Assembly: GCA_048772705.1 (NCBI GenBank)
Contig: JBLWGC010000092.1
Span: 124,001 to 188,000, forward strand
Source: Leidyana gryllorum EB-2025a
Taxonomy: Eukaryota; Protista; Apicomplexa
Direction of reading: 5' to 3'
DNA: 64,000 nt
The translations under genes and the position numbers were made by a program. Positions 6,958-55,100 of the stretch are shown here, in pieces; within the stretch, counting starts at the first letter, position 1, and every line of letters begins with the position of its first letter. Below the pieces are notes generated by a model that was given only the letters and a program-made list of their open reading frames with translations, was not told where the DNA came from and did not search any database.

Positions 6958-7501
6958 ATGGCAGAGGTGCATCACGCGAGTGAAGAGGTAGGAGTCGTCA
7001 CAGAATGTGGCTGTCTAATTCTTCTCAAGCCGTCGAATGGCGGCCCAAGACTCGAAGACAGCGTCGTTGTAGGATCACTCAATTTGCACTCCGCTCACTC
7101 CGAAAGAACGGGTACAACTCAAAAGGATCCGTCACGCTCACTTCACGTAACACGCGTGTGCGTACACCCAAATCATGCAGCTTCAACTCAGAAGTGTGGC
7201 CATACTGGGCGATCAACAGGAAGTTCATTCAGCTTCCATCGCTGAGCGAATCTTGATGACCAATCAAAATCACCTGGTTCTTCTTACGAAGACACCCGAC
7301 GAGTCAGACCCTTTTGTAATGGCTCAATCAGTATCCCAGGATATCTGGCCGCCGCACCGATTAGATGGAACGAATGTGGCGGAATTCCGTGCCTGGAGAG
7401 TCATCGTAGTCGACAGCTGGCAGATGCTCTCATGCCATTGCTACATTGCGCTGGATGAGAATTTCCCGACAAAAAATATATCACAATCGTTGTGTCTTTA
7501 A
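6958..7501 (+). CDS. Hypothetical protein, probably with two short introns
   Basis: ORFs 6877-7245 and 7175-7501 can be joined by a GT-AG intron near 7147-7180; no recognisable motif. Confidence 0.3.
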
Positions 7502-10049: not shown

Positions 10050-11988
10050 TCAGACGACGCTGTACAGATCGTGGCTCGGCAATCCGTGACACGTTTCGTT
10101 CACGTAATGCATCATCAAATTGCCGAGCGGCTCGTATGGACTGAAGGCATATTTCTGAATCAAATATGGATTGATGGGGCGTTTGATAATCACTACTCGT
10201 ACCTGCTTCCTAGAACATGCGTCGTCAGTGAACTCCCTGAAGGCGTGGTAGCATGGTCCCTCTTGCCCTTGGAAGCACGGGAAAACAGGAGTCAAGAACT
10301 TGGGGAACTGGCCGGGTATGATCTCAATATTGGTAGGCTCAATCGCCTCGTTCGGGTTAACAAAAGCCCCTTTGGTCGGCGACTGGTACATGAGGTCTTC
10401 TTGGCAATCTTGAAGTCGGAAGAAATAGTAAATGGGCCCCGCTTTCTCCAAGATTGTCTCGACTTGACCGATGGTCGGCTTGTTTATGTTCCAGATGCAA
10501 GCTTCGCGACCTATCCACTCCAATAGGATGCCATCGAATATGGGATGGTTCATAATCACTTGAGTAATCAGAGACCAATTCGGGTTGTCGTAAGCTATCC
10601 CGTAAATCTTGTATCGCTCGCCATTCTTGCGATACGTCTTTCGCAGGGTCAGTATGGCTTCATAGTACGCCGCTTCTCGCTCAGTTTGCATTTCCGTGGT
10701 CATGGGAATGTAGATGCCAGTTGCGCGCATCGCCTCCGCACCATACAGACACTTCTCAACCACTTCTGCATTGGTGAATGGGTAACAGTACATCACAATC
10801 TCATCCGGCCATGTACGGTATGGACTTGGGGGTAGTGGTGGCGTGGCCAGAATCTCCTCGTCGGTGATATTGACTGGGGTATATTGGTGACGGTTCTTCA
10901 CCATTGAAACCATTCCTGTCAAAGGCGGTGGTGGCTCATCGAAATATGCTGCTGGCAAAACTCCAGCGTAACTCCGCGGAGGAGTGCCGCCCTCGCTGGA
11001 CTGGGCTGCTTGTATCCGCTTCAACCTGGCTTCAATGTCTTCTTGCATCTGCGCTTGATAATCTTGCCAAACACCCCAACGAGCAAGATTGACTGAGTCA
11101 TCTGCCTCCCCGTAATATACAGCTTCTTCCATGCCATCTTGCAGCAGAGCAGCAAGAGGATCAAGCACCGGTTTGGGGTACCCGATGTTATGCTCAATGG
11201 TAGCATTTGTGTGTTCCTTGCCAGCCGAAGCTGTAGTCTTGATATTGCTCACTTTGGAGGTGGTGTGTGGGGCCGATGAAACTGCAGTGGTGGAAGCGGT
11301 CGTGGTCGTGACTTTGGGTACCGACGAAGTTGACGACATTGCTAGTGGTGTTGCAGCTCTACTTTGTGAGACCACCAGAGCCGTGGAGGTGGAGACCGTC
11401 GATGTACTACTACTGGAACTATCACTATCCTCAGGAGCTGGCTGGACTTGGGGAACTGATTGAGTTGATGATGCCAACGGTGGTGGAGGTGTATAGTGCT
11501 CGGCGGGGGGTGGGAGAGGTTGAGCAAATGTGGTCGTGGTGTAGCCAGGGACGGATGGCGCTGGTTGGGCGATTGGGTTTTGGAGTATCGGTTGAGACGG
11601 AGCCACCAGCGGAACAAGAAGCTCTGGTTGTGTCGGCAAAGGGTAAACGAGAGGTGCCGATAATTGCGGAGTCGGCTGCGGTACCACACGCTGTTCGATC
11701 GGGCGTTGAGTGAGAACAGGGTGTTGAATGGGTGCTGACACGCGTTGTTGAGCCACCGGCTGAGAATATGAGGCGCTCATCTGCGAGGAGGGCGCTAAGT
11801 ACTGCGGAGAGTTGGGAAGACCGTTTGCAGGCTGCTGAGATATGAAACAAAGAAAATGACGGACTGGATACCTGGCTGTTTGCCTGTGGGGCTAAGGGGC
11901 CTCCCATGTACACATACGAAACCGTTCCAGGCGAAGGGTCAGCCGAGGCGTGCTGCCAGAGGGCTATCCATATGCCGGAGCGCCACAT
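10050..11988 (-). CDS. Hypothetical, possibly secreted protein: Pro/Gln/Thr-rich N-half plus aromatic/Cys-containing C-terminal domain; one intron near 11871-11835
   Basis: 576-aa ORF; upstream exon MWRSGIWIALWQHASA joins in frame via CAG|GTATCC..CTCAG. Confidence 0.75.
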
Positions 11989-12015
11989 GTCTCCCACCTA
12001 CACACGCGTGTGTTA

Positions 12016-14465
12016 TCACTCTTGATGTTCGTGATCATCAGGGAGCGCTCCCGGTGCGACTTTCCGTCTTGGCCAAACTAGAACTGCAGCTACCATTGTG
12101 AGCGGGAGGGCCGTCTGGGTTCGAATGTATCTGGAACGAGGTTTTGTGTGCTTACCGCCAAGAGAGGGTGGCCAGCCCACCAGTATTGCAACGCTTCTTT
12201 ATGAGACAGTTTCCAACGGGGCGCACATGGGTAATGGCTTCCGAAGTTTCGCACCACCCAGCTTTGAGCTATCGGTTTGCCCACGACAGTAGCGCATTGG
12301 AAGGGTAATGGGTACCACTGGGAATGTCGTATTGGTTGCCACATTCAAATCCTACCTCCTTGTCAGCCTCTGAGTTGTATGAGGCGCTCCCGAGGTCCAG
12401 ATGCAGCTTGGTCTTTCCACCTTGCACAAGGCGAGTGAAAGCACTGCCTAGGGCTCCGAGGGGTTGAGTGTGCAACCTGAGGTGCTGCACAAGGCGTGTG
12501 GAGTGTTCTTCCATGGGGGGAGTATCATCAGTTTCATACTCGTCGGCTTCCGCTAAATCTTCATTATCTCCTAATTGATCCGGCAGTGTAACTGCGGCAG
12601 GTGCTGTGGGCATTTCACTGTAAGAGTGCGTACCTGAATTGAGGTAATCCTCTGTCCCTCGGATGTCAGCTTTGCTCAAGCTTTTGATTGGATCTACTCT
12701 AAGAGAGCACAGGATGCTGCAGTGTACCCGAAAGATTGCATCTCAACGATGTGACAGGGTGTTGGGGCTTACCGAACATTCTCTTCTTTGCTCTTGCAGA
12801 GGAAAGGGAGATTCTCCTCGAAAACGGGCAATTCATTGTTGCGGACAATATTGACCAGTGCTTCAGCCAGTTCGCGGTGCGCGACTGCAGCTGGGGTTTC
12901 CAACAGGTCCTCTGGTTCTTCGGACACTCGAAGGTCGATCTTATCCAATTGCCAGTGGCTGGAGGGGAGTTGTACGATTGAAAGAGTGTTGTTGCCCGCT
13001 GCGTCAGGGGCCAGGATTAAGCCTTTGGTAGCCTTGGGGAGGTCGCCCAAATAGTCGCTGAGCGTTTCGACGAGATCTGGTGTATCGATATAGATCCAAT
13101 CGAATAGAGAGGCAGTTCGCAGTGCCATGGCCTTATGGAGGGTGGAGGGAGCGCGTCCACTAGTGAGGACGACGTAAAGGCGTCCATCTGGGGCATTAGG
13201 AGTGTTCAAAAGCAACGACTTGAGGTCATGAGCAGAGCCGGTCCATTTTCTGAGTACATCTGGCACTCCCTCTTGCAGCCAAGAGACGAGATGGCGTGGT
13301 TGAAAGTGTAGCATCTTATCATAGACATTGGGAACTCCGCCGGGGGTTAAGGTCATAATCGCAGGAGTGATTCGCAATTTAACGGGCAGCAGTTTGTCAG
13401 CCAGCGGATCAGTGGCATCAACTCGCATGAAGGAGATTCTGCCGTAGAAGCGAGCTGCTAACTCAGTCCAGAGCGGTATCAGATTTTCCGTCCACTCGGA
13501 TCTCGGATCTGCTATGAGGAAAGTCCAGACTCCAGATATGTCGGGAGGTGTCCAGAGCTGACGGTGGTCGAGAGAGGGAGCCACAATGCTCTCCCAGGCA
13601 GGCCGAGTCAGCAGATACTCAGTGGCTTGGAGGTTGCTGAAAAAGGCATGGGAGGACCCACTGGTGACCTTTTGGGTTTGGTCATACAGGCTTCGCCGCT
13701 TGTCATCGGCCAGTAGCTTATAAGCCTCATTGATGTGCTGAAGTGTCGTGGATGGCAAACAAGCTGATTGTTATTCAGACACTCACCCTGAACTTTTGAT
13801 GACACTCTTCGTCACAGCCTTGTTCCCTCTTGTCGGGATGCCATTCCAGACTCAGTTTGCGATGAGCGCGTCGTATATCAGCTCGTGTGGCTGTCCGAGG
13901 CACATCCAACAGCTCATACGGGTCCACTTCGAGCGTGTGTGTGGAGGTGATCATCGAATGGTACTGGTCTTCGCCGGATTTCAAAGCAAAAAGGACAACG
14001 ATCAACAGCACAATCGCCAGGATTCGGAAGGGAGCCTTCCTCATTGTGTTGAGAAGAGCTTTGGTGAATACCATTTTCTCTTCGGCTCCCACATCTGTTT
14101 GAGTGCTGCTGCGGAAGGAGTTGAGAATCTGGTCAATATCCTCGTCTTGATGACGTCGCTGTTGAGCTGGTTGCTTCTTGGTTTGTTTAGGCGAAGCGAC
14201 TTTGGCCCCTTTGGGAGGCGGCTGAGAGGAAGCTTTGGAACCCGCGCCAAAAGAGCGGTCAGCAGCTACCTTCAGGGCCTCTTTGAATGCCTGTAACACA
14301 TAAGTTTGAGGGTGGAGGATCAACCATCACCTGGTCACTGGCCCGAGTGGGTTCAGTTCCAGCATTCTCTGGCACTATTGCGGCCTTAACATCGTCCAGG
14401 TTAGAGAATGCCTTCTCTTTCCCATCGAAAGACCCGTGTTTCGCCGCGCCACGTTTGCGGGGCAT
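12016..14465 (-). CDS. ER-type DnaJ protein (TM, J domain, thioredoxin-like folds, C-terminal TM; DNAJC16-like), multi-exon
   Basis: DPYELLDV..LSLEWHPDK..INEAYKLLADDKRRSLYD; W..LIPLWTELAARFYGRISFMRVD thioredoxin-like segment; downstream exons join in frame to ..DDHEHQE*. Confidence 0.8.
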
Positions 14466-14495
14466 GAAGACTATGTAAAATTAGTGCTATGGTTT

Positions 14496-16241
14496 CTAAG
14501 CAAGTAGCGTTTCTACAGCATCTTTGGGCTACAATCGTTCGAAGACACAGAGTCAATGCTCGCGGGGCGACGCCACTTACCTCCAACACTCTCAAATCTT
14601 CGTAGGTCTGGCCAGTGCCAACGAAAAATATGGGTCGTTCACTCTGATATGCCAGTGAAATGGCTGCTCCGATCTGTTATATGGAGTCTTACATCCGAAG
14701 CGAACCCGGGACGTTGGTCCTACCTTGTCATCCACACAGTCAAATTTGCTCAGAATAATACCGTCAACTCCCCGTAGTCTGCCTCGCCCAGCTGTACCCA
14801 CACGCACTGCTTGGTCGAACTTTTGCAGCTGATCCAAGCCATCATTCCCGACCAATGCCTCTCCGACGAAAAGTAAAAGGTCGGGGCTGCAGAGTGCCAC
14901 GAGTTTGCCCAAAGCATCCATCAAAGGGGCGTTGTCCTGTGGCAGCGTGCTCGTTACTGGGAAGCTACGTGGGCAGGTGGGAACTAACCTGCATCCGTCC
15001 CGCTGTGTCTATGAGCACCACATCGATGCCGTCCTCTTTGGCTTGCCTCAACGCGCCTTGGGCTACAATATGCGGCTCCAAGCCATACCCTCGGTCGTAA
15101 AGAGTCATGCCAAGATTGGCCGAATGTCGCCGTAGTTGCTCGACGGCACCCGAACGGAAAGTATCGCAGGCTGCGATCATTACCGAACACTTCATCGAAC
15201 GTCGCATAAAGTGAGCGAGTTTCGCAAGGGTCGTAGACTTTCCTACACCGTTTACCCCCTGACAAGGTTTGCTTTCGAGTTTGTCAGTGACCCACCATAA
15301 CGACAATACTGAACACCCTATCAGCGGTCTTGGCGGCTGCAATCTCAGACATTAGATTTCGAACCCTGTGTGTGTTTCATTTCGGAATTCCCAGACATCC
15401 AGTGTGAGAAAGAGAGCGTCATACCGTTCAGGCGTTAAGATTCTTTGAAGGACCTTTTCGAATCCTCGGTAAACAACCCGCTTGCTGAGTTGCTGATCTG
15501 TAGGGATATCTTTGCAGACAGCGTCAGCAATGGCACGAGCCGCGCCCACGGCAACGTTCTTAGCTTCGAGCTTCCAGACAATCTCGGCAATCATCTCATT
15601 ATAACTTGAGTACAAGGCACTGTCTGGGTCAGGCCATAGGTTGCGGTTTAGCCATTTGAACAATCGGAATATGAAGGAAGCTACGATCAGTCGCGCGTTA
15701 AAGGTGTCCATCCACCCAAACTTACGCGGCGGATCGGGTTTCTTGCGAGCTTTATCTATTGCTTCCTGCTTCAGCCGTTGCTTGCACTCCCGCTCATGCT
15801 GCATTTTGGATTTCCTGAGTGGGGTCCGTTCGGACGGGTCCAAAACTTACCCGCTGGAAGGCAAGAATCCAGTCGGGGGAGAGCTCGAAGGGTGATAGGG
15901 GGTCCCGGACGGTGTACTGGTGCAGCAACCACGTGAGCACAGCCAGAACCTGTGTGGCATCCACCATGGCCACAGCATTCGGTTTGATGGCCGCCATGCC
16001 AACGAGCCCTCCTTCTTTGACAAAGTACACTCCAGGAGCTTCCTCATGAAGACCCTGGGTTGCAGGAAAGGGATGACGAGGGGGGAGGGGGGTGCTGACG
16101 CCTTACTGCAGTTAGGGTTCCGCCTCTATCGAGAGCGGGACTCCAGTAGTCGTAGATATCGTCTTGAGGCTCATACTGCCATAAAACTACGCCTCCGCTG
16201 GTGGCGATTAGGAAGGACTTGAAGGCATCGGCGATGGTCAT
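14496..16241 (-). CDS. SRPRA: Signal recognition particle receptor alpha subunit, multi-exon
   Basis: Longin-like start (FLIATSGGVVLW), GVNGVGKSTTLAK, IAACDTFRSGAVEQL, DTAGRMQ, FVGEALVGND, LSKFDCVDDK, GTGQTYEDL. Confidence 0.93.
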
Positions 16242-17248
16242 AACATTTTCGGGGCGTTTTCGCCTGATTGCGAAGTGTCTTCATTCTCGAAAGGTAGTAG
16301 GGATGACATCTTCTCCAAGAAGGCCAAATCGTGGATCGAGAGACGGCGATTGCTGGGCTCGTCAAGGAGCATTCGCCGGGTGTCACGAGTCTTGGACATG
16401 ACAGACACCTGAATTCGGTATTGGAGGTAGAAGCTTGTCAGAAGCTTAGCAGCACTCATTTGGTGCTTGCGTGCCAAGAGATCGAGGCATTCGCCAATCA
16501 AACTGTCTTCGAGACGTGTGGCTACGTCCACATCGATGCACGTCTGAATTTGGATGCGCATATTGCGACAAAAGGTCGCTAAGCGTCTCTCGTATGACAG
16601 CGGGTCAACTTTGGTCAGAAGTACCTACAGGGGGGAGCAGAGATCAATGTTCCGACTGGGGACTATCTCACAAGAGGCATCATGGTGAAACTCGAAGAGT
16701 TCTGATAGAGGCTCTCTATGCTGCTGAAGGGCCAGTAGGCCAGGCCAATGGCTTTAAGCACACATCGGGGTCTTTTGGGAGCGTTGTACAACCGAGTCGT
16801 TGCGTGCCAGACTTCCAGCTGGCGACCTGTTGTGAGCGGAGGACGCACTACGAGAATGATATGTGCTACGATGCTGGGACGGTCATATACTCCCATGAAC
16901 TGGAGAGCCCTTTCATATAGTGGAGCCACATCACGACCCGTCTCAGGCTTTATGATCAGGGTGATGCAGATGTGAGTCTCCGGCTGGCGACGCAGGTCCG
17001 CAGCCTCGGACAGCGCGAGCAGTACGTCCCTATGGGTCTGTTCGACGACATTTTTCTACCACACAATAGCAACTTCTACGCAGTACCTCTTCAACGACGA
17101 AGTGTACATATCCATCTTTCCATGCCTCCAGTATGAGCGCCCGGCAATCAGATCCGCACTGCGAGGTGAGGTCTAAACCAATCCATGGCACAGCTGCTCC
17201 ATTGGCCAGCTGATAGGCCGGTACAGCACCCACTATGGTGCTGGGCAT
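16238..17248 (-). CDS. Degenerate aldo-keto reductase-fold protein (probable pseudoenzyme); about 2 introns
   Basis: VPAYQLANGAAVPWIGL..GYVHF, LKAIGLAYW, RLATFCRNMRIQI, LARKHQMSAAKLL, LSIHDLAFLEKM follow the AKR motif order. Confidence 0.7.
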
Positions 17249-17301
17249 TCTTTGTATGTCCCACGTACCTCGAGGTCCCGGCAACTTTTTTTTGGGCCTG
17301 A

Positions 17302-27940: not shown

Positions 27941-30900
27941 CTAAGACTGTCTTTCACGGGGCAAAGGGACTGCGCCAGCTAAGGGGCGAACACCTTCGGG
28001 CCCTTTCAATGTGGGATTTCGGAAGAACAGCTTGGAATCTTGTGACCTGAAGGTCGACAACTGCGGAGGCACGGGAAGTGCTGGCGAGGTCGGGGGCTTA
28101 GCAGTGGTCGTGCCGTCATCGGTGCTGCTCGGGAAGCCGAAGAGGGGATTCAATGGCACGAAAGACAGGTCGTGCGATTGGGCATACAAATCACCAAGCG
28201 CTTCGGCAACCTCCATCCCCGCCAAACCCAGCAATCTGTCAATGAACTGCTGGTGGATGAGAATGAGGGGCAAATCGTTCCGCTTCCGGCCGAAAGGTTG
28301 CTGCATCGCTATCACCGCCAGAAAGATTCCGTGAAACAGTCCAGCTGTAACTCCTGTAAGCACCAGGGCAAATGACAAACTCGGGGCAAAAGCAGCAATG
28401 CATATTGGGGAGATGACCAGAACGATCAAATCCGACCATCCCAGACTCTGTTGGAGACTGATTGGCAGTCGATTCTCCGCGCATCGCCGAGCCCCAGCAT
28501 AGTTCAAAAGGGCTAAATTCATTTGAGCCCAAATTTGAGCCGCAATAGGAGGAGCAGCACGAATACCGCCATTCAGATGGCGATTCGAAATGGCCACATT
28601 CATCCAATGAAACACGGTGTTCGGCTGGTCATGAGATTGTGCTAACGCCGAGCTCTCTTCCTTAGTCAACCCTCCTGAATAGATCTCTGTTGCTCAAGAC
28701 AGACTCATGATACACCTACCCAGAACCTCTAGAGGAACAGAAGGGGCTCGATCCACCGTGAGGAGATTCTGAATTGCAACTGCGTGGAAGATCGACATCA
28801 CGTGAAGGACTTGAGCGTGAAATGTTGATGATGTTACTCCCTCTTGTACGGAGTCTTGGTCAAAGGACATTATCATTGATGCAACGTGCAACAGGTACTG
28901 CGACATATCAGTGAGCTTGGTTATGCTCTCCCAAAAGCGCGTGTATGCCATGTTGACGGCGAAAGCTAAAATCAGACCGGCAGTCTGCAGCAACAAAAGT
29001 CATTGGAAAATCGACAGGGCAATACACGCGTGTGTCACACAACAATATAACGCGCACACGCCGTATGGACACCACATAGGTCACTATCGCCATTCAGACA
29101 CCGACAGAACGAAGATTGTTACAAGCAATCGCGTTTTACGATATCATGCATCGCCGATTGGCGAGAATTATGTACAGACGATCCGTCCGAGCGCGTTAAC
29201 GAGCTATCACCAGTCAAAGCATTGGGATTTTTCGATGACTTGGTCGCCGTGGCCGTGGAATTGGAAATCCCAAACATGTCTCACGCCTTCGGAAACAGAA
29301 GTATAGCTGGCGGTAGTTTTCGGTCAAGATCTCTTCTTGATATATGGGGCGGTGACTCTTCCGCCTACATGATAGGTGTCTCTGACGGAAAGCGTGTCGA
29401 CGCTAGTAACATGTGTTGGGCCCCCAACACACGTCAGGGTACAAATAACGTCATTGAAGTGTTTGAAGACGAGCGCTACTACTCCAAATGCCCAAAGGAC
29501 AATACGTTTCCAATCTCCACCTCACCTCCTCGACCACGGGCGTGCCAACCAGCACACCGACCAACCACTCGTCGGCCCTCCGTCCCATCACCACGCAGGA
29601 ATCCACGACCGCCACTGAATGTCGCAGCGGGGACGAACAGGAAGGCGATGGACTCGACCCTCAAACGAAGACACATCAGTATGGCTTCCAAATCGCGATA
29701 TATTTCTCGCGATCTGGAGAGCCCGAGAAGATATCCTCTGAAGATGCCCGATTTGCCACCAGAGATAGCTGGACCGTGGTACGCAGCAGTACACAGCAAG
29801 TCATCTTCGAACAACATGACAGGATGGGAACACACAGCGATGGAGATTCCACCCAAGCGCAGGCGTGCTTGCTTTGAGCGACCACCGGCTGCTCCAGAGA
29901 GGGCGAAGGCCTCCGCAGGAGCCGTCAGAACAACGCCGACCGGCCCGACGACCGCCAGCGACAAGCCGCACAGCGGTTTTGCCAACTTGTCGACTTCCGG
30001 TCGGCTGACGGGTGTCCCGCCAGCATCCCCCAAGCCGGAACCCAAGAAGGAGGAGACCAAGAAGGAGCCGGAGTCCGAGATACCGGGGCCCAAGAAAGCG
30101 GAGGCCAGGAGAGCCGAGCCCCAGAGACCCGACCCCAAGGCACCAGAAGCCAAGAAGGAAGAGGTTAAGAAGGATGAGGTCAAGAGGGACCTAAGTCCTA
30201 CTCCCATGGTTTATCGAGCGGTATGGAGCCGGAGTCCCGCGAGGCACGCTGTCGAAACTCCGATTATCTCTCCCACATCCTCAAGGGAGGAGGGAGAAAT
30301 GACAGACTCCGCCAAGTTCCACAATACAAGTACACCTGCCGTTTCGCAATCTCCGGGGGTCGGGTTGAGCGGTCCGCCATCTTCAGGATCTCCGGGGGTC
30401 GGGTTTAGCGGTCCGCCATCTTCGGGATCTCCGGGGGTCGGGTTTGGCGGTCCGCCATCTTCGGGATCTCCGGGGGTCGGGTTTGGCGGTCCGCCAAGTC
30501 TGGATCTGGCTTTGCCCGGGTTAGCCGTATCCCCGCCGAGGCGCCTTCTTCAACCTCAACTGCGAACGCTGAGCTCAATCATTCGTGAGACTCAGCCCGC
30601 TGCGCCGAAACCGCGGGCGCATGCTGCTGCAGGAAGGGCTGCCCCCGTTTCCTCTGTTCGCGAAGTTCGTATCGAGTCGCCCAAACCGGTAAGAACGGTC
30701 ACAAGACGGCCTGGAGACGGAGAGCCACCTATTCCCCGAGATCTCGGGAACTTGTCGTGGGACGCAGCTCGCAAATCAAATCACCGATTCAAACATAGCA
30801 TAGGTCCAATTCTCGTGCGAGCTCCAGTGGTGGGCCAATCCGCACCGGATGCCTTATCGACATCTCCGGGGACCCATAATGAAATATGGCTACTGAGCTC

Positions 30901-48789: not shown

Positions 48790-51154
48790 ACGGACACCAC
48801 GCTATCTGTATGATGAAGTCTCCAGTGTGTGTGCACCCGCCGTTCTTTGATCTCGAAGAGGAACACGACCGCTACCAACAGAGTTATCCCCGCCATCATC
48901 GGCAACCGCACTGCATTAGACAATAGGACACGCGTTACACACACAAACTATCCAACTGACCTGACAATCCACACATTTCATTCCCACCCTCAGCGGTATG
49001 CCAAATTGCGACAATGGCCAGTCTAGCGATCAGAGGTGTGAACCAGAAAGCGAACAGCAGGTAGGACATGGCCAACCGGCTTTCATTCAAGGCGAAGGTC
49101 TGCAAGCCAAAGGAGACCGCTGAGGGGGAAAAGAGAACTTGGTGCAGAATGTTGAATATCAGTGAACCAATGATCCCCAACCAGCGACCGAACGAGTGCT
49201 GCGAGATTTCAGACAAACTGTGCGGCGGCAATGACTAAATGAACCTCACCTCCAGAATCTCTGTGCATCCTTCGCGGTAGAGGGTGACTGCTAACATTAT
49301 GCCAGGAACACCCAGGCACACTGTCTGAAGAAAGGCAACCACTGCGTGCATCGATGTGCGGTGCCAAAAGCGATTGAACAGATAACCGGGAACTACTCCA
49401 AATACCGCCAAGGCGGAAGTAGCGCATAAAAGGCCAGCGGCCCAACCATTAGAGGCATTCTTGCTGTAAAACAACAACTGGGCAGTCTCGGAATAAAAGA
49501 AGAAGCCCAGCGATAACCACGTGAAGAACAAAAGCGCATATAAGAAATCCCGACGGAAACCTGGACAATTCTTCAGGTGATAGCGGATAGATTTGATGTT
49601 ATCAGCGGCTCCTCGCGGTACTTCCGATATTGCAGCATGCACCCGTCGAGGTGGTAACCCACCATTGTACAATCTCAAACATAAAATTGCCTTTTTGTGT
49701 TCATGACGTCTCAAGTGGCCTGCCAGTCGCCGTTGTAAAGGGGGTCGCACAATTCATGCAACGCCTAATCACACTCACACTCGCGCACACACTCGCAACA
49801 CACATCCAAAGTCAGTGATTAACAGCACAGTGCCTCCTGTTCCACGACCGACCAGTCAGCTGATCGATCACTTTGGGGACAAACAGCACTTACCCGCCAC
49901 AGAGTCGTCGACCTTCATGAGATTTGACCGGAAAATGATATATACCACTCCGGCTAGTATCAGTCCCGCAATGGACTTGGCGGTGTAGGCGTTTTCAGTG
50001 GGTCGCGGAAACCATCCTGCCGACGTTGGCTCTGTCGTATACACCAAGACGATAGCGGACAGCATCGTATTGATGGTGAAGCCAATGCAGAAGGATCCAA
50101 CCACCATCGCCCCCGCCATGTCCATGAAATGACAAATAAGTGATTCATACAGAAACAAGGCAACTGCCCACATTGTGATCCCTGATGCGGCCCCATCTAG
50201 GATTCTATTGACCAGCAGACTCCAAATATTGGCATCGACAATAGCGACAGTGTTGCCAATTATATGCAGCCACATCGACAATCGGATGAGTCTGAGTCTC
50301 CGACAGTCCCGAAGCGGAGTATAATGAAGGATTAAAGCAACGAGGCCAGCAGCAGCAACAAAAGGTCCCTCAACGAAGAGCTGCCACCACAGTGTGGGCA
50401 ACTCATGGTGAATGGGGGAATCTGGCCGCGCACGATTGAAACCCACAATAACAAGGGGCGATACGGTTAACATCATACGCAGGATTTGAGCCGAGGGGTG
50501 TGTAGACACTCGATCCATCTTGGAAATGAGTACCGAAATGTTACTGGTAGTGTCTTCGCTCTGTTTGCGGCAACAGCACCCTCGAGTTTGTTCACTCGGA
50601 ATTACACTTCCGCCATCTATTTCTGGCTCTTGAACACTCACACTGTACTCTATTTCATTCCGTTCGTCGGGAGGAAGGCCAAAGTAGACGCGCTGAGTAT
50701 CATAGAACCGAGGATTGGCGCCCTCCTCTGCCAGCTTTATCGAGCTGGTGGACTCCATCTCTGCTCTCGGCGATTGAGGCGGTAACTCCATACCGAGGCT
50801 CGACCGTCGGGGTGAAGACCTTTGATACGAGGCTCCGCGGCTTCTGCTGTTTGTGCGGGAACGTCTCCGAGTGTCCGTAGAAGATCTTCTTCGCTCATGG
50901 CGATAAGGTCCACTCAAGCTGAAAGGTCCTGAACCCCCTCCACCAGCCGTCAAAGCGGCTGTCAGCCCAGCCGCACTGGTCTGCTTGAACTCCAATGGTG
51001 AATTCTCGAGGTCGTATATTGCTTCAGCCAAATGCACATCTCCAACGTAAATCGAACGGCTATCTGTAACCTCACCGGGTCCGCCCTCTCCTCCAATTTC
51101 TCCGAATTCCTCTGTTGAGGAGAACGGTGGGGCATAAAGGGGGCTCGGGCGCAT
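48786..51154 (-). CDS. Divergent MFS-like multi-pass transporter with long cytosolic N-terminus, multi-exon
   Basis: About 12 hydrophobic segments; LLVNRILDGAASG and LFLYES resemble MFS TM4/TM5 motifs. Confidence 0.7.
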
Positions 51155-51162
51155 TTTTGCTA

Positions 51163-52140
51163 TCAGGCAACTGTACTGGGGATGCCACTGGCGGCGCCCT
51201 GAGGTTCTCTATCTTTGGGGCTGCCTAACTGCTGGGCTTCAATGTCGCTGAGGGAGAGCTGGTCTTGGGGCAACCGAACTGCCTCGCGGTACGAGAACCG
51301 TTCGGCCACTCGCCGGACGCGTCGCCGATCATAAATTGCCTGAGCCGCTGGCTTCATCTCCAAGGGGAAATAGAAACTGCAACAGATCCAGGCCGTGACC
51401 ATGCCAATGATCGAACCTGCAACCACATCAGAAGGGTGATGTCGATAGTCGCTTGTTCGGGAAACAGCTACTGCTGTAGGGACTGACAAGATGCCAAAGG
51501 GGATCACCAAACGCCAGCTGCCTATGTTACGGAACAGGCACAACTTGGAGTAGGCCCACAGCGCTACAAAACCCATTTGCGCAAAACTCATCACAGAGTG
51601 TGCAGAAGGGAAAGACTGGCGACCATCCTCCAAAGCTGCTTCAGAAAGCTTCGTATGCCCTGTGCAGTCCGGTATCTCCGGAATATCTTCCCAAGAAGTC
51701 CATCCAAACGCCTTCATCCAGTCATGGTAATCGTTCATCCCGAAACACCGTGCAAGATAGTCAGGCCGGGGCCGTCCGTACATTCGCTTCACCAGTTCAC
51801 AGATCAGCCATCCAAATGCCGCAGACAGCGAGATGCCCAACATGTACGTCGTCACTTCTTCGGCTATCCCCGTCCAGTCCCAATGACCCATATAACGTAG
51901 CAGAAACACTCCTAACAAGAGAATGCTGATCGCCATGACAGCTAGTAAAACGGTAGCAGCTGCTTCGCTGAACATCTGTCGCTCTTCGTATGGATACGCA
52001 TATTTGCTCCAATCATTGCCTTGGACTCGTCGCACAAAAGGGTGGTATGTGGATCGAAATATGATAGTGGCTACGATTACTGCTAATCGTGCCGCAATTT
52101 CGAGGGTCAGATATGTCTTGTTCAAAAGGAAGGGGGGCAT
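51163..52140 (-). CDS. PAP2-family lipid phosphate phosphatase (DPP1/LPP-like), intronless
   Basis: KRMYGRPRPD, SFPSAHS, SRTSDYRHHPSDV. Confidence 0.93.
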   Translation of the reverse strand: MPPFLLNKTYLTLEIAARLAVIVATIIFRSTYHPFVRRVQGNDWSKYAYPYEERQMFSEAAATVLLAVMAISILLLGVFLLRYMGHWDWTGIAEEVTTYMLGISLSAAFGWLICELVKRMYGRPRPDYLARCFGMNDYHDWMKAFGWTSWEDIPEIPDCTGHTKLSEAALEDGRQSFPSAHSVMSFAQMGFVALWAYSKLCLFRNIGSWRLVIPFGILSVPTAVAVSRTSDYRHHPSDVVAGSIIGMVTAWICCSFYFPLEMKPAAQAIYDRRRVRRVAERFSYREAVRLPQDQLSLSDIEAQQLGSPKDREPQGAASGIPSTVA

Positions 52141-52178
52141 CTGCGCTTTATAAAAAGATTGCCAAAAGGATATTTTGT

Positions 52179-55100
52179 CTAAGCACTATCCCCAGTGCTC
52201 TGGGCGGACAAAGGGACCTCGGGTTCGCCTGCTGCTTTGACGAGCGACGAAAAAATCGAATCAGGGTTCTTCAGAAGCTCAGCCGGAGTTCCGTACTCAG
52301 CAATCGTTCCGCGATCCATCACCACAATCTGACATGGTGGTGATACACTGTCATCGTACAAACACACGCGTGCTCACCTTATCGTAGTCAAGAACTGTTG
52401 CGATGCGATGAGCAATGGTGACTATAGTACAGTTTGCAAAACACCGCCTGATCGTCTGCTGGATGGCGGCATCAGTCTGAGGATCCACAGCACTCGTGGC
52501 TTCGTCCAGTAACAGAATGCGACTGTCGCGTAGCAGCACTCTGGTTAAGCAGAACAGTTGACGTTGGCCAATGCTGAAGTTGGAGCCCTCCTCTCGCAAG
52601 GGCGTTTCGAGACCGTCTGGCAAGTCTCTGATGACCTGTGCCAGGCAGGCGTCGTCCAAAGCCTCCCAAATTTGAGAATCAGTACGGATTCCCATGGGAT
52701 CCAAACTATCGCGCACAGAACCAGTGAAAAGGACAGGATCCTGAGGGATGACCCCGAGTCGACTGCGCATTTCTTGAACATTAAGGGATTGCAGATCGAC
52801 TCCGTCGATCTCGATGCTGCCGATAGTGGGCTCGACCAGTCGAAGTAGAGTTGAAATGATGGATGACTTTCCAGCCCCTGTTCTCCCAACGATTCCGACC
52901 TGATGCGGAGTGATGTGTGTCAAAATCTCTGTAGGATTGAGAGTAAGTAGCTCACCCTTTCACCAGCGTTTATAGTGAGGTTGATATCTCGAAGAGCCCA
53001 AGGCAAATTGGGTCTATATTGTAAACTTAAATTCTCGATGTCGATCTGTCCTCGTGAGGGCCAGTCTTTGGGTAAAGTAGTGGTGACGGGGAATTTGCTT
53101 CCCTCCTGTGGCACACTTTCTTCGCTGCAGTACTCGCTGACTCTCTCCACGGACACTATGTTCGACTCCCGGACTCTGCAGTTGCATATTGATTGCTTTT
53201 GAAGAAAGAGAGCCCACCCTGAAACGCGGACAAGTTCGTTGAGCGCCGAGGTTACAGTGAGCGCATAAGTTATGGCGAGACCGGCGACACCACCAGTGAT
53301 GGTTCCAGCCCCAATGACAGAGCAGAAAGCAGCACAGGCAACAACAATGCTACCGGTGAGCTCAAGTCGTACCGAAAGCCATCGATTCGCCATTACGTTG
53401 AGGAGATTGGCCCCCATGGCTGCTTGTAGGTGGTTGTATCCCATTTCGGTGAACCACTTCATCTTGCCATAGGCCCTGATAGTCGGAAGGCCATCCAATG
53501 TTTCAGTAAAGTGAGTGACAATGGGCGATCGAAGTGTTGAGTCGATACGTTTGAGCTGTCGGGCAATGTTGATGAACTGTCGCTGGATAGCATTGTACAC
53601 AATGCCGAGGGGAGCGAGGACAATGATGGAGTAGGGTAGAGCGAGCACCACCACGCCCACAGAACACAACACCGTACATATCTGTCTCAGATAACTGTAG
53701 AGGTTATCTGGTATCGCATTATCAATAACAAACAGATCCTTGGAAAACCGGTTTAGGATACGTCCAACCGGAGTGGATTCAAAGAAAGTCATCGTGGCTC
53801 CGGTTATTTGTTTCAACATATTGTCGTGGAACCCTCGAGCAGCTCGTTGACTTCCACAAGCGAGCAGATAAGCTGAACACGACGCAGTGAAGACCGAACA
53901 CAGAGAGATGCACGAGTACAACAATATGCCTCGAAGTGCTGATACATATCGTGGATCGGAACCGTCCATTGTGTGATTCGTCCAGTAACTCAACCACACG
54001 GTCGAGCCTGCCTCCACCAGTTGTGCCAACACACATGTCACAATCAATGACAGCACCAGCAGTAACCCTCCAGCCATTATAATGTACTCTCTGTACACAC
54101 TCCAGGCAACAGCACCTGTTTCAACGTGTTCCTTCACTAACAACCCGGAATCTGCCGCCTTGGAAGATACTTCACCATCCTCACTCACGCCGGTATGTTC
54201 ATCATGAGGATTTCGGCGCGACCGAATACTCATCACACTGCGAGGCTCGTCCACACACGCTATCAGTTCATCTGTGCCCTGAGCTGTCTCCTCCGCAGGC
54301 TGAGAAATGTCCCCACAGGACTCCAACAGCGAGTTGGAAGAGATCAGTGAGCTTGTCAGTGACTGCATCATCCGGGCTCTCTGGTTTGCTGGAATCATCT
54401 GAAGGGTCTCTGCGGATAACGCCCGGAAACTCTCATCGTCCAGCGCTTGGCTCAGAGAGGAGAAGTGTTTGCCTTGGCCTCCGTCCAAGAAAATGATCTG
54501 ATCGGCCCGAGACAGAGTCTCCAAACGATGGGTCACAAATACGATGCACTTGTTCTTCAACATTCCTTCGAAAACGTGCTCAAAGATGTGCTCCGCAACG
54601 TGAGTGTCCACAGCACTCAATACATCGTCGAGTACATAGACATCCGCATTACGATACACCGCACGTGCCAGGGAAACCCGGTGTTTTTGACCACCCGAAA
54701 GATTGATCCCTCTCTCGCCGATTTCAGTCAGATCTCCGTGCACCAACATCTCTAAATCCGCCTCCAAAGCGCACGCCCGAATGACGTTCATGTACCTCTC
54801 TGATTCATACGGCAGACCAAACAAGATGTTCTCTCGCAAGGTGACCGAGCGTACCCATGGCAACTGATTTCAAGTAAACTTCGAGCCACTCAGACCCTTA
54901 CCTGTGTACAGTACGCCACTGTGCCATGCACAAAGGTGTCCCCAAACACTGGTTGAATCTCGCCTGTGATAGCACTCAAGAGAGTAGACTTCCCAACACC
55001 GGTACGCCCCACAATGGCAGTCAAGTGGCAGTTAGGCGCCACCGAGATGCTTATGCCATCAAGCACTGGCTTCTGGTCGGGATATTGAATCCGCAACGAC

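What the first reader, a model, noticed from the sequence alone, without database searches (positions are those of the whole stretch)
10050..17248. Operon-like four-gene train (AKR-like > SRP receptor alpha > ER DnaJ > secreted protein) with -4, 30 and 27 nt spacers
Seen: four co-oriented intron-containing genes whose stop-to-start distances leave essentially no room for a 3'UTR, promoter and 5'UTR. Knowledge: SRPRA and ER DnaJ proteins both serve ER import/folding. Inference: either a polycistronic transcription unit with a secretory-pathway theme, or promoters and poly(A) sites buried in neighbouring CDSs. Polycistronic mRNAs are uncommon in eukaryotes without trans-splicing, so this may be an undescribed expression system for this lineage.
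Basis: partly seen in the sequence, partly recalled or inferred. Interest (0 to 1): 0.8.

Follow-up and report, generated by a model that had tools for sequence, protein, structure and literature searches.

The report
Tightly packed four-gene run in gregarine
Four separate intron-containing genes of a gregarine parasite really do sit almost end to start (4 letters of overlap, then gaps of 30 and 27 letters), but relatives suggest this is the lineage's usual extreme gene packing with overlapping transcription and not a conserved operon.

Summary
On the minus strand lie A (divergent AKR-like, 310 aa, 17248-16238), B (SRP receptor alpha, 463 aa, 16241-14496), C (DNAJC16-like ER J-protein, 741 aa, 14465-12016) and D (secreted protein, 633 aa, 11988-10050). 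Stop-to-start distances are -4 (ATGA), 30 and 27 nt, and 89.6% of the 7,199 nt is CDS. The starts and stops of B, C and D are supported by gregarine orthologues, two of them from transcripts.

The train is not a conserved unit. C-D is tandem in all four relatives examined. B is head-to-head with C in Gregarina niphandrodes (11 nt between the two ATGs) and in a Logan contig, and is absent from the locus in a third relative. A has no counterpart in the three relatives' contigs.

The C-D spacer carries a palindrome, ACACGCGTGT. It is conserved in G. niphandrodes, occurs four times more often than a control genome-wide, and is associated with gene starts. The B-C spacer carries an A/T element of a kind that clusters within 40 nt upstream of start codons.

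In Gregarina sp. Poly, the B, C and D orthologues sit on one 10.9-kb assembled transcript.

No RNA run was listed for this genome, so polycistronic and overlapping monocistronic transcripts cannot be separated. I favour dense packing with start-proximal promoters.

The scan has noted the same pattern on many other pieces of this genome.

The parts
16238..17248 (-). Gene A: divergent AKR-like protein, 310 aa. Exons 17248-17087, 17055-16672, 16624-16238; introns of 31 and 47 nt.
   Evidence: The frame closes and coding statistics are positive in the expected phase for all three exons. Exon 1 (E 0.85) and exon 3 (E 0.25) give weak, collinear hits to solved AKR chains. There is no Pfam hit, and the PF00248 scan of the genome does not find it. 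No homologue lies in L001-L003.
16238..16241 (-). ATGA overlap: the TGA of A and the ATG of B share 4 nt.
   Evidence: Read directly from the sequence. The coding frame switches from A's to B's at this point.
14496..16241 (-). Gene B: SRP receptor alpha, 463 aa, 8 exons, introns of 37-59 nt.
   Evidence: Pfam SRP54 GTPase domain, E 7.8e-29. Solved SRalpha chains match the C-terminal exon. The N-terminus (MTIADAFKSFLIATSGGVVLW) and the C-terminus after the last intron (PKDAVETLLA) match P0042 of Gregarina sp. Poly. Phases are given.
14466..14495 (-). B-C spacer, 30 nt and 33% G+C, with AATTTT at 14482-14477.
   Evidence: A/T elements of this kind are enriched upstream of start-like ATGs and cluster at -40..-1.
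12016..14465 (-). Gene C: DNAJC16-like ER J-protein, 741 aa. Exons 14465-14331, 14290-13787, 13737-12773, 12716-12356, 12317-12156, 12114-12016. Parts in order: basic N-terminus, TM segment, J domain with HPD, Trx-like region, C-terminal TM segment.
   Evidence: Pfam DnaJ, E 3.6e-11. Orthologues were found by the full HMMER search; a source names the Cryptosporidium ones 'DnaJ homolog subfamily C member 16'. tblastn of P0006 covers most of exon 2, exons 3 and 4 and part of exon 5, including the exon 3/4 junction; exon 1 is matched only by eye (MPPKKGKGAKG against MPRKRGAAKHG). Coding statistics cover 14465-14075.
11989..12015 (-). C-D spacer, 27 nt, containing the palindrome ACACGCGTGT at 12002-12011.
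   Evidence: The 22-nt C-D spacer of G. niphandrodes holds CACGCGTGTG. The 10-mer occurs 103 times in the genome against 25 for the control. A start-like ATG lies within 60 nt at 10 of 24 sites against 14.6% of random sites.
10050..11988 (-). Gene D: secreted protein, 633 aa. Exon 1 (11988-11872) encodes the signal peptide; a 37-nt intron follows; exon 2 is 11834-10050. It has a S/T/P-rich stalk and a conserved C-terminal domain.
   Evidence: Orthologues are 49-55% identical, and four of them start with signal peptides. The domain alignment has 34 invariant columns. The model core (residues 70-200, pLDDT 70-93) is of alternating beta/alpha type and weakly resembles TIM-barrel glycosidases, with best E 4e-3.
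17249..17301 (.). 53-nt divergent spacer between the ATG of A (17248, minus) and the ATG of an MMS19-like gene (17302, plus). It contains a T8 run.
   Evidence: The MMS19 link comes from tblastn to the L001 gene, which carries a weak MMS19_N hit.

Best explanation
These are four independent protein-coding genes in a hyper-compact gregarine genome, and almost no DNA is left between them.

Inferred mechanism: each gene is most likely transcribed from its own start. These starts would be set by very small start-proximal elements, namely A/T-rich boxes or a CGCG-core palindrome within about 40 nt of the ATG, or for B by sequence inside the last codons of A. The 5' and 3' ends of the mRNAs would therefore run into the neighbouring coding regions. 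Transcripts would overlap, and read-through molecules covering two or more genes probably exist as a by-product.

Shown: the run A-B-C-D arose by local rearrangement. The ancestral state was probably SRalpha head-to-head with the J-protein gene, followed by D.

Only the C-D pair is an old tandem. The ER and secretory flavour comes from an old neighbourhood of B, C and D, not from an operon.

Shown here are the gene models, the spacers, the synteny, the motif statistics and the co-assembly of B, C and D transcripts in a relative. Inferred are the positions of transcript starts and ends and the way the proteins are translated.
For: - Gene models and spacers.
- Density: 89.6% of the 7,199 nt is CDS and 57 nt are spacers.
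- The same tightness in other orientations, which cannot be a same-strand polycistron: 53 nt between the divergent ATGs of A and the MMS19-like gene; 11 nt between the divergent ATGs of SRalpha and C in G. niphandrodes; 14 nt between MMS19 and C in L001.
- The upstream neighbour of C differs in four genomes (tail of SRalpha here, head of SRalpha in L002 and L003, head of MMS19 in L001). So whatever starts transcription of C must lie in the tiny spacer or in the gene itself.
- The palindrome ACACGCGTGT in the C-D spacer is conserved in G. niphandrodes at the same junction. It occurs 103 times against 25 for the control genome-wide and is associated with start-like ATGs (10/24 against 14.6%, p about 0.001).
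- A/T elements are enriched upstream of start-like ATGs and cluster at -40..-1; one lies in the B-C spacer.
- The SRalpha, C and D orthologues of Gregarina sp. Poly sit on one transcript contig, NODE_237, 10,947 nt. This fits overlapping transcription.
Against: - There are no RNA data for this genome, so no transcript end is mapped.
- The co-assembled transcript in the relative fits a true polycistron equally well.
- No start-proximal element was recognised upstream of B.
- The set of 'start-like ATGs' used for the motif statistics is heuristic and contains some internal exons.
- In Cryptosporidium parvum, motifs also sit in the internal spacers of proven polycistronic transcripts, so a motif in a spacer does not rule one out.
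Confidence: 0.6

Rival explanations
1. This is a true cis-spliced polycistronic unit without trans-splicing, as reported for Cryptosporidium parvum. One capped, polyadenylated RNA would carry two to four of the ORFs. Downstream ORFs would be translated by termination-reinitiation (ATGA) or leaky scanning, or from co-existing internal monocistronic RNAs.
For: - The genes are co-oriented with -4, 30 and 27 nt between ORFs.
- C. parvum, of a lineage related to the gregarines, is reported to express about 10% of its genes on transcripts holding 2-4 genes, with internal monocistrons alongside.
- The SRalpha, C and D orthologues lie on one 10.9-kb assembled transcript in Gregarina sp. Poly.
- The tandem C-D pair is conserved in all four relatives.
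Against: - The B-to-C order is not conserved, since B is divergent or absent in relatives, and A is absent.
- Equally small gaps occur between divergent genes, which cannot share a same-strand RNA.
- D and C carry start-associated elements in their spacers.
- From established knowledge, reinitiation after ORFs of 310-741 codons is inefficient in eukaryotes.
- An unstranded de novo assembly also merges transcripts that merely overlap.
Confidence: 0.25
2. A is no longer a working gene. It would be a decaying AKR relic whose body now serves as the promoter and 5' leader of B, so the ATGA 'overlap' joins a gene and a pseudogene.
For: - No Pfam hit, and the genome-wide PF00248 scan finds other AKR genes but not A.
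- Only weak hits to solved AKR chains, and none for exon 2.
- The AKR catalytic motif is not recognisable in exon 1 (sequence; my reading).
- No homologue in the three relatives' loci and no paralogue of exon 3 in the genome.
Against: - The 310-codon frame is intact across two canonical, phase-preserving introns.
- Coding statistics in all three exons equal those of B, C and D, including the last 90 nt.
- Absence from three short contigs does not show absence from those genomes.
Confidence: 0.1
3. The small spacers are artefacts of wrong gene models, through wrong start codons or missed terminal exons.
For: For a while I thought so myself. An in-frame Met in C (14074) aligns with the start of the L001 orthologue. 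A GTAAGC donor sits on an apparent stop of C at 12772.
Against: - The transcript-derived orthologue P0006 has the same long basic N-terminus and the same exon junction, and continues into the later exons.
- P0042 confirms both ends of B.
- The orthologues of D have signal peptides like exon 1 of D.
- Every frame closes.
Confidence: 0.03

Closest known systems
Polycistronic transcripts of Cryptosporidium parvum (Xiao et al., bioRxiv 10.1101/2025.01.17.633476)
   Same: A related apicomplexan lineage with a compact genome and co-oriented runs of 2-4 ordinary cis-spliced protein genes. No trans-splicing was found there. Sequence motifs lie in the internal spacers, and internal monocistronic RNAs co-exist with the long ones.
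   Different: In C. parvum the long molecules were seen by long-read RNA sequencing and RT-PCR. Here no RNA data exist. The motif there is E2F-type, whereas here it is a CGCG-core palindrome and no E2F domain was detected in the genome (not conclusive). This genome also has far more introns per gene.
Overlapping gene expression and multigene transcripts in compacted eukaryotic genomes (microsporidia, nucleomorphs; Williams et al. 2005, as cited in PMC1523203)
   Same: Very short or absent intergenic regions, and overlapping genes, with transcripts expected to begin or end inside neighbours as a by-product of compaction.
   Different: It is a different lineage. Those genomes are intron-poor (my knowledge), while here genes keep 1-7 short introns. 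Transcript ends are not mapped here.
Gene-dense gregarine genomes (Porospora cf. gigantea, 84% coding; Gregarina niphandrodes; PMC9250747)
   Same: Eugregarines with small genomes, G+C of about 54% and tiny introns. The D orthologues place this genome among the terrestrial eugregarines.
   Different: That paper attributes the density mainly to short introns. It does not use the words intergenic or UTR, and uses 'overlap' only for sequence windows and assembly. Near-zero spacers, stop/start overlaps and start codons 11-14 nt apart are therefore not described there.
Bacterial ATGA translational coupling
   Same: The same four-letter stop/start overlap between consecutive ORFs.
   Different: Both genes here contain spliceosomal introns, and the organism is a eukaryote with cap-dependent scanning (established knowledge). 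Nothing shows that the ribosome passes from A to B.

Membership tests
Eukaryotic polycistronic transcription unit (C. parvum / green-alga type) | Two or more complete ORFs on one RNA molecule | not testable with these tools
   No RNA run was listed for this genome, so read laying could not be used. In a relative, three orthologues lie on one assembled transcript contig, but an assembly cannot tell one molecule from overlapping ones.
Eukaryotic polycistronic transcription unit (C. parvum / green-alga type) | Co-oriented neighbours with short internal spacers | tested here: met
   Distances of -4, 30 and 27 nt, all on the minus strand.
Eukaryotic polycistronic transcription unit (C. parvum / green-alga type) | Order and orientation of the unit kept among relatives | tested here: not met
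   C-D is kept in all four relatives. B is divergent from C in L002 and L003 and absent from L001, and A is absent from all three.
Eukaryotic polycistronic transcription unit (C. parvum / green-alga type) | One promoter at the 5' end and none inside | tested here: inconclusive
   Start-associated elements lie in the B-C and C-D spacers. Motifs also occur in the internal spacers of proven C. parvum polycistrons.
Overlapping expression in compacted eukaryotic genomes | Near-absence of intergenic DNA, in any gene orientation | tested here: met
   89.6% CDS and 0.8% spacer in the run. Divergent start codons are 53, 14 and 11 nt apart here, in L001 and in G. niphandrodes.
Overlapping expression in compacted eukaryotic genomes | Transcripts that start or end inside a neighbouring gene | not testable with these tools
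   No RNA data. For B it follows by logic, because the ATG of B lies inside the last codons of A.
SRP receptor alpha (gene B) | SRP54-type NG GTPase domain plus an N-terminal SRX-like segment and the SRalpha C-terminus | tested here: met
   PF00448, E 7.8e-29. Solved SRalpha chains match at E 5e-7. Both termini align with gregarine SRalpha proteins.
DNAJC16-like ER J-protein (gene C) | J domain with HPD, followed by a thioredoxin-like region and membrane segments | tested here: met
   PF00226, E 3.6e-11, with HPD present. The Trx-like exon matches orthologues, and a source names the Cryptosporidium ones DNAJC16. No Pfam thioredoxin hit was obtained, so the Trx-like label rests on those names.
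Aldo-keto reductase (gene A) | Match to the Aldo_ket_red profile and the catalytic Asp-Tyr-Lys-His tetrad | tested here: not met
   No Pfam hit exon by exon, and the PF00248 genome scan does not find it. Only weak, collinear hits to solved AKR chains. The joined protein was not searched or folded.

The most novel reading that the evidence does not exclude
Gregarines might routinely express neighbouring cis-spliced genes from shared, untrans-spliced polycistronic mRNAs. Downstream proteins would be made by termination-reinitiation at ATGA or across gaps of 20-30 nt. A-B-C-D, or at least the anciently linked C-D pair, would be one such unit, and the conserved palindrome in the C-D spacer would act at the RNA level or as an internal control point.
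Probability: 0.12. Interest if true: 0.8.

Novelty: new member of a known kind. Interest (0 to 1): 0.4.

Why it matters
Genes with start codons 11-53 nt apart, or with a stop overlapping the next start, leave no room for the textbook eukaryotic promoter, leader and tail.

The comparison across five gregarines is a natural experiment. The J-protein gene keeps working with three different upstream neighbours. Its start signal must therefore be tiny or lie inside the gene, or transcription must be pervasive.

This makes gregarines a good place to ask how small a eukaryotic promoter can be. It also lets one ask whether the polycistronic transcripts reported for Cryptosporidium are older than that genus.

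A practical point follows as well. Such packing misleads gene predictors: the public G. niphandrodes model XP_011133306.1 fuses two genes, and the neighbouring SRalpha model lacks its first exon.

Tried and rejected
1. RNA evidence. The look-up of sequencing runs listed no run, so read laying was never usable.
2. There is indeed an intron there (12772-12717).
3. I considered Met 14074 as the true start of C, because it aligns with the short L001 orthologue. I rejected this because P0006 and P0009 have the long basic N-terminus and the region scores as coding.
4. My 3-periodic Markov model called 12290-11800 non-coding. Homology shows three short exons there, so the model misses short, oddly composed exons.
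5. Exon 3 of A hit solved SRP19 chains at E 0.03, which would have been a striking SRP19-SRalpha pair. I judged it chance. There is no Pfam SRP19 hit, and by eye the exon lines up better with the C-terminal part of AKRs. The other AKR hit is to exon 1.
6. The exact hexamer AAATTT is rare in this window and not start-linked here. Only the broader A/T class is.
7. A crude genome sample of 'stop of a long ORF to the next ATG' distances is contaminated by exon pairs of single genes, as checked. I draw no genome-wide spacer statistic from it.
8. An E2F domain scan of the genome found nothing, and the controls did not ring, so it is uninformative.
9. The word search with exon 3 of C found nothing, because the orthologues are longer than its length window. 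The full HMMER search found them.
All searches were exon by exon by reference, and scripts only computed phases and translated exons separately.
Full report
**What is there.** Genome G000 has 15.5 Mb in 237 contigs, and the window is C92:124001-188000. It encodes AP2 domains. Protein D of the finding is 49-55% identical to proteins of Gregarina sp. Poly and Blabericola migrator. The organism is therefore a terrestrial eugregarine. It is not G. niphandrodes itself, whose C orthologue is only 31% identical.

**Gene models.** I rebuilt the four minus-strand models exon by exon.
- A: 3 exons, 310 aa, 17248-16238.
- B: 8 exons, 463 aa, 16241-14496.
- C: 6 exons, 741 aa, 14465-12016.
- D: 2 exons, 633 aa, 11988-10050.

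All 15 introns are GT..AG and 31-59 nt long, and every frame closes. Of the 7,199 nt, 89.6% is CDS and only 57 nt are spacers.

**Are the boundaries right?** B has the SRP54-type GTPase domain, and its last exons match solved SRalpha chains. The transcript-derived SRalpha of Gregarina sp. Poly (P0042) starts and ends at the homologous residues, including the C-terminus that lies after the last 52-nt intron.

C has a J domain. The full HMMER search found its orthologues, and a source names the Cryptosporidium ones DNAJC16. P0006, from the Gregarina sp. Poly transcriptome, supports C in three ways:
- It has the same long basic N-terminus.
- It has the same junction between exons 3 and 4.
- It continues into exon 5.

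Exon 6, the C-terminal membrane segment, I matched by eye to the G. niphandrodes protein.

The orthologues of D begin with signal peptides. D has a matching 39-codon first exon 27 nt after the stop of C.

A is supported only by its intact spliced frame and coding statistics, and by two weak, collinear hits to solved AKR chains. It fails the Pfam AKR profile. I call it AKR-like, not an AKR.

Two of my own doubts, a later start for C and an intron in place of the 27-nt spacer, were refuted by these orthologues.

**Relatives.** Three genomic contigs and one transcriptome bear on the locus.
- G. niphandrodes (L002): SRalpha lies head-to-head with C, with 11 nt between the two ATGs. D follows C after 22 nt. 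The public model XP_011133306.1 wrongly joins C and D.
- L003 (Logan SRR18067488): the order is MMS19(-), SRalpha(-), C(+), D(+), with spacers of about 360 and 210 nt.
- L001 (Logan SRR31860986): MMS19(-) faces C(+) with 14 nt between the ATGs. D follows, and there is no SRalpha.
- A has no homologue on any of these contigs.
- Gregarina sp. Poly: SRalpha is named as ORF p4 and D as ORF p1 of transcript contig NODE_237, 10,947 nt. C carries the next EukProt number.

So C-D is an old tandem and B is an old neighbour of C. The co-oriented order B-to-C, and the presence of A, are particular to this genome.

**Signals in the spacers.** The C-D spacer contains the palindrome ACACGCGTGT, and the G. 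niphandrodes C-D spacer contains CACGCGTGTG. L001 has ACACGCG about 45 nt before the D start.

The 10-mer occurs 103 times in the genome against 25 for the reversed control. A start-like ATG lies within 60 nt at 10 of 24 sites examined, against 14.6% of random sites (p about 0.001). Two of the sites are copies of one repeat.

Upstream of 71 heuristic start codons, A/T words (A6/T6, AATTT, TAAAT and the like) are enriched 6-11 fold. They pile up at -40..-1. The B-C spacer has AATTTT 12-17 nt before the ATG. The A/MMS19 spacer has a T8 run, and the G. niphandrodes and L001 spacers before C are also A/T-rich. I recognised no such element before B, whose upstream sequence is the coding tail of A.

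**Reading.** Equally tiny gaps occur between divergent genes, where a shared same-strand RNA is impossible. C also works with three different upstream neighbours. The simplest account is therefore extreme packing, with very small start-proximal promoter elements and mRNAs that run into their neighbours, as described for other compact eukaryotic genomes.

Read-through RNAs covering several genes probably exist, and the co-assembled transcript of the relative fits that. Whether they are translated beyond the first ORF is unknown.

A true polycistronic system like that reported for C. parvum remains possible; I give it about one chance in four. No RNA run was listed for this genome, so the decisive test could not be made.

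**Novelty.** The paper library holds no report of nuclear polycistronic or overlapping transcription in gregarines. The Porospora genome paper discusses density only through short introns. The kind of thing is nevertheless known.

Earlier notes of this scan report the same ATGA overlaps and 'operon-like' runs on many other pieces of this genome. One follow-up reached the same conclusion. I treat these as leads only.

Joined spliced proteins were neither searched nor folded. A was therefore tested only exon by exon, and only the single-exon C-terminal domain of D was folded.

Noticed in passing
L002 (G. niphandrodes KK211506.1) 12300-12470: The public protein XP_011133306.1 ('putative DnaJ', 1061 aa) fuses two genes. 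The DNA has a TAA stop after the C-terminal membrane segment, then 22 nt, then an ATG with a signal peptide. The annotated 139-nt 'intron' hides all of this.
   Followed up: yes
L002 9894-9989 (minus strand): The public G. niphandrodes SRalpha model (P0033, 498 aa, named SRP54) lacks the N-terminal exon, which lies at 9989-9894, 11 nt from the start of the J-protein gene. Its C-terminus also reads on instead of ending like other SRalpha proteins.
   Followed up: partly
window 12002-12011, 7150-7159, 29024-29033; 103 sites in G000: The palindrome ACACGCGTGT is four times more frequent than its reversed control and tends to lie 13-57 nt upstream of start codons. One downstream gene (L041) and D both begin with signal peptides. 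It is a candidate binding site for an unknown factor.
   Followed up: partly
264 kb sample of G000 (window plus L005-L024): TGCATG/GCATGT-type words, which resemble apicomplexan AP2 sites, are also about fourfold enriched in the 100 nt before start-like ATGs.
   Followed up: no
L003 (Logan SRR18067488_386610), whole 13.7 kb: The SRalpha, C and D orthologues are uninterrupted ORFs here, although they have 1-7 introns in this genome and interrupted models in L001 and L002. Either that organism is intron-poor or the contig was assembled from RNA. I could not look up the library type.
   Followed up: no
window 10053-11012 (minus strand): The C-terminal domain of D (34 invariant columns among 7 gregarine sequences, with motifs such as YCYPF and AYDNPNW) has no Pfam hit. 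Its model has a beta/alpha core that only weakly resembles TIM-barrel glycosidases (GH98, GH18, GH10; best E 4e-3). It seems restricted to gregarines.
   Followed up: partly
window 16241-16624 (minus strand): Exon 3 of A gives a weak match over about 100 residues to solved SRP19 chains (E 0.03), next door to the SRP receptor gene. I judged it chance, but it was the best-scoring hit for that exon.
   Followed up: partly
window 51166-52185 and 49871-51154 (minus strand); L020 4309-5259: Two further candidate tight tandems. A PAP2-family ORF is followed after 8 nt by a 428-codon ORF. A GST gene has its ATG directly after the stop of an upstream 109-codon ORF. The unnamed partners were not verified as genes.
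   Followed up: partly
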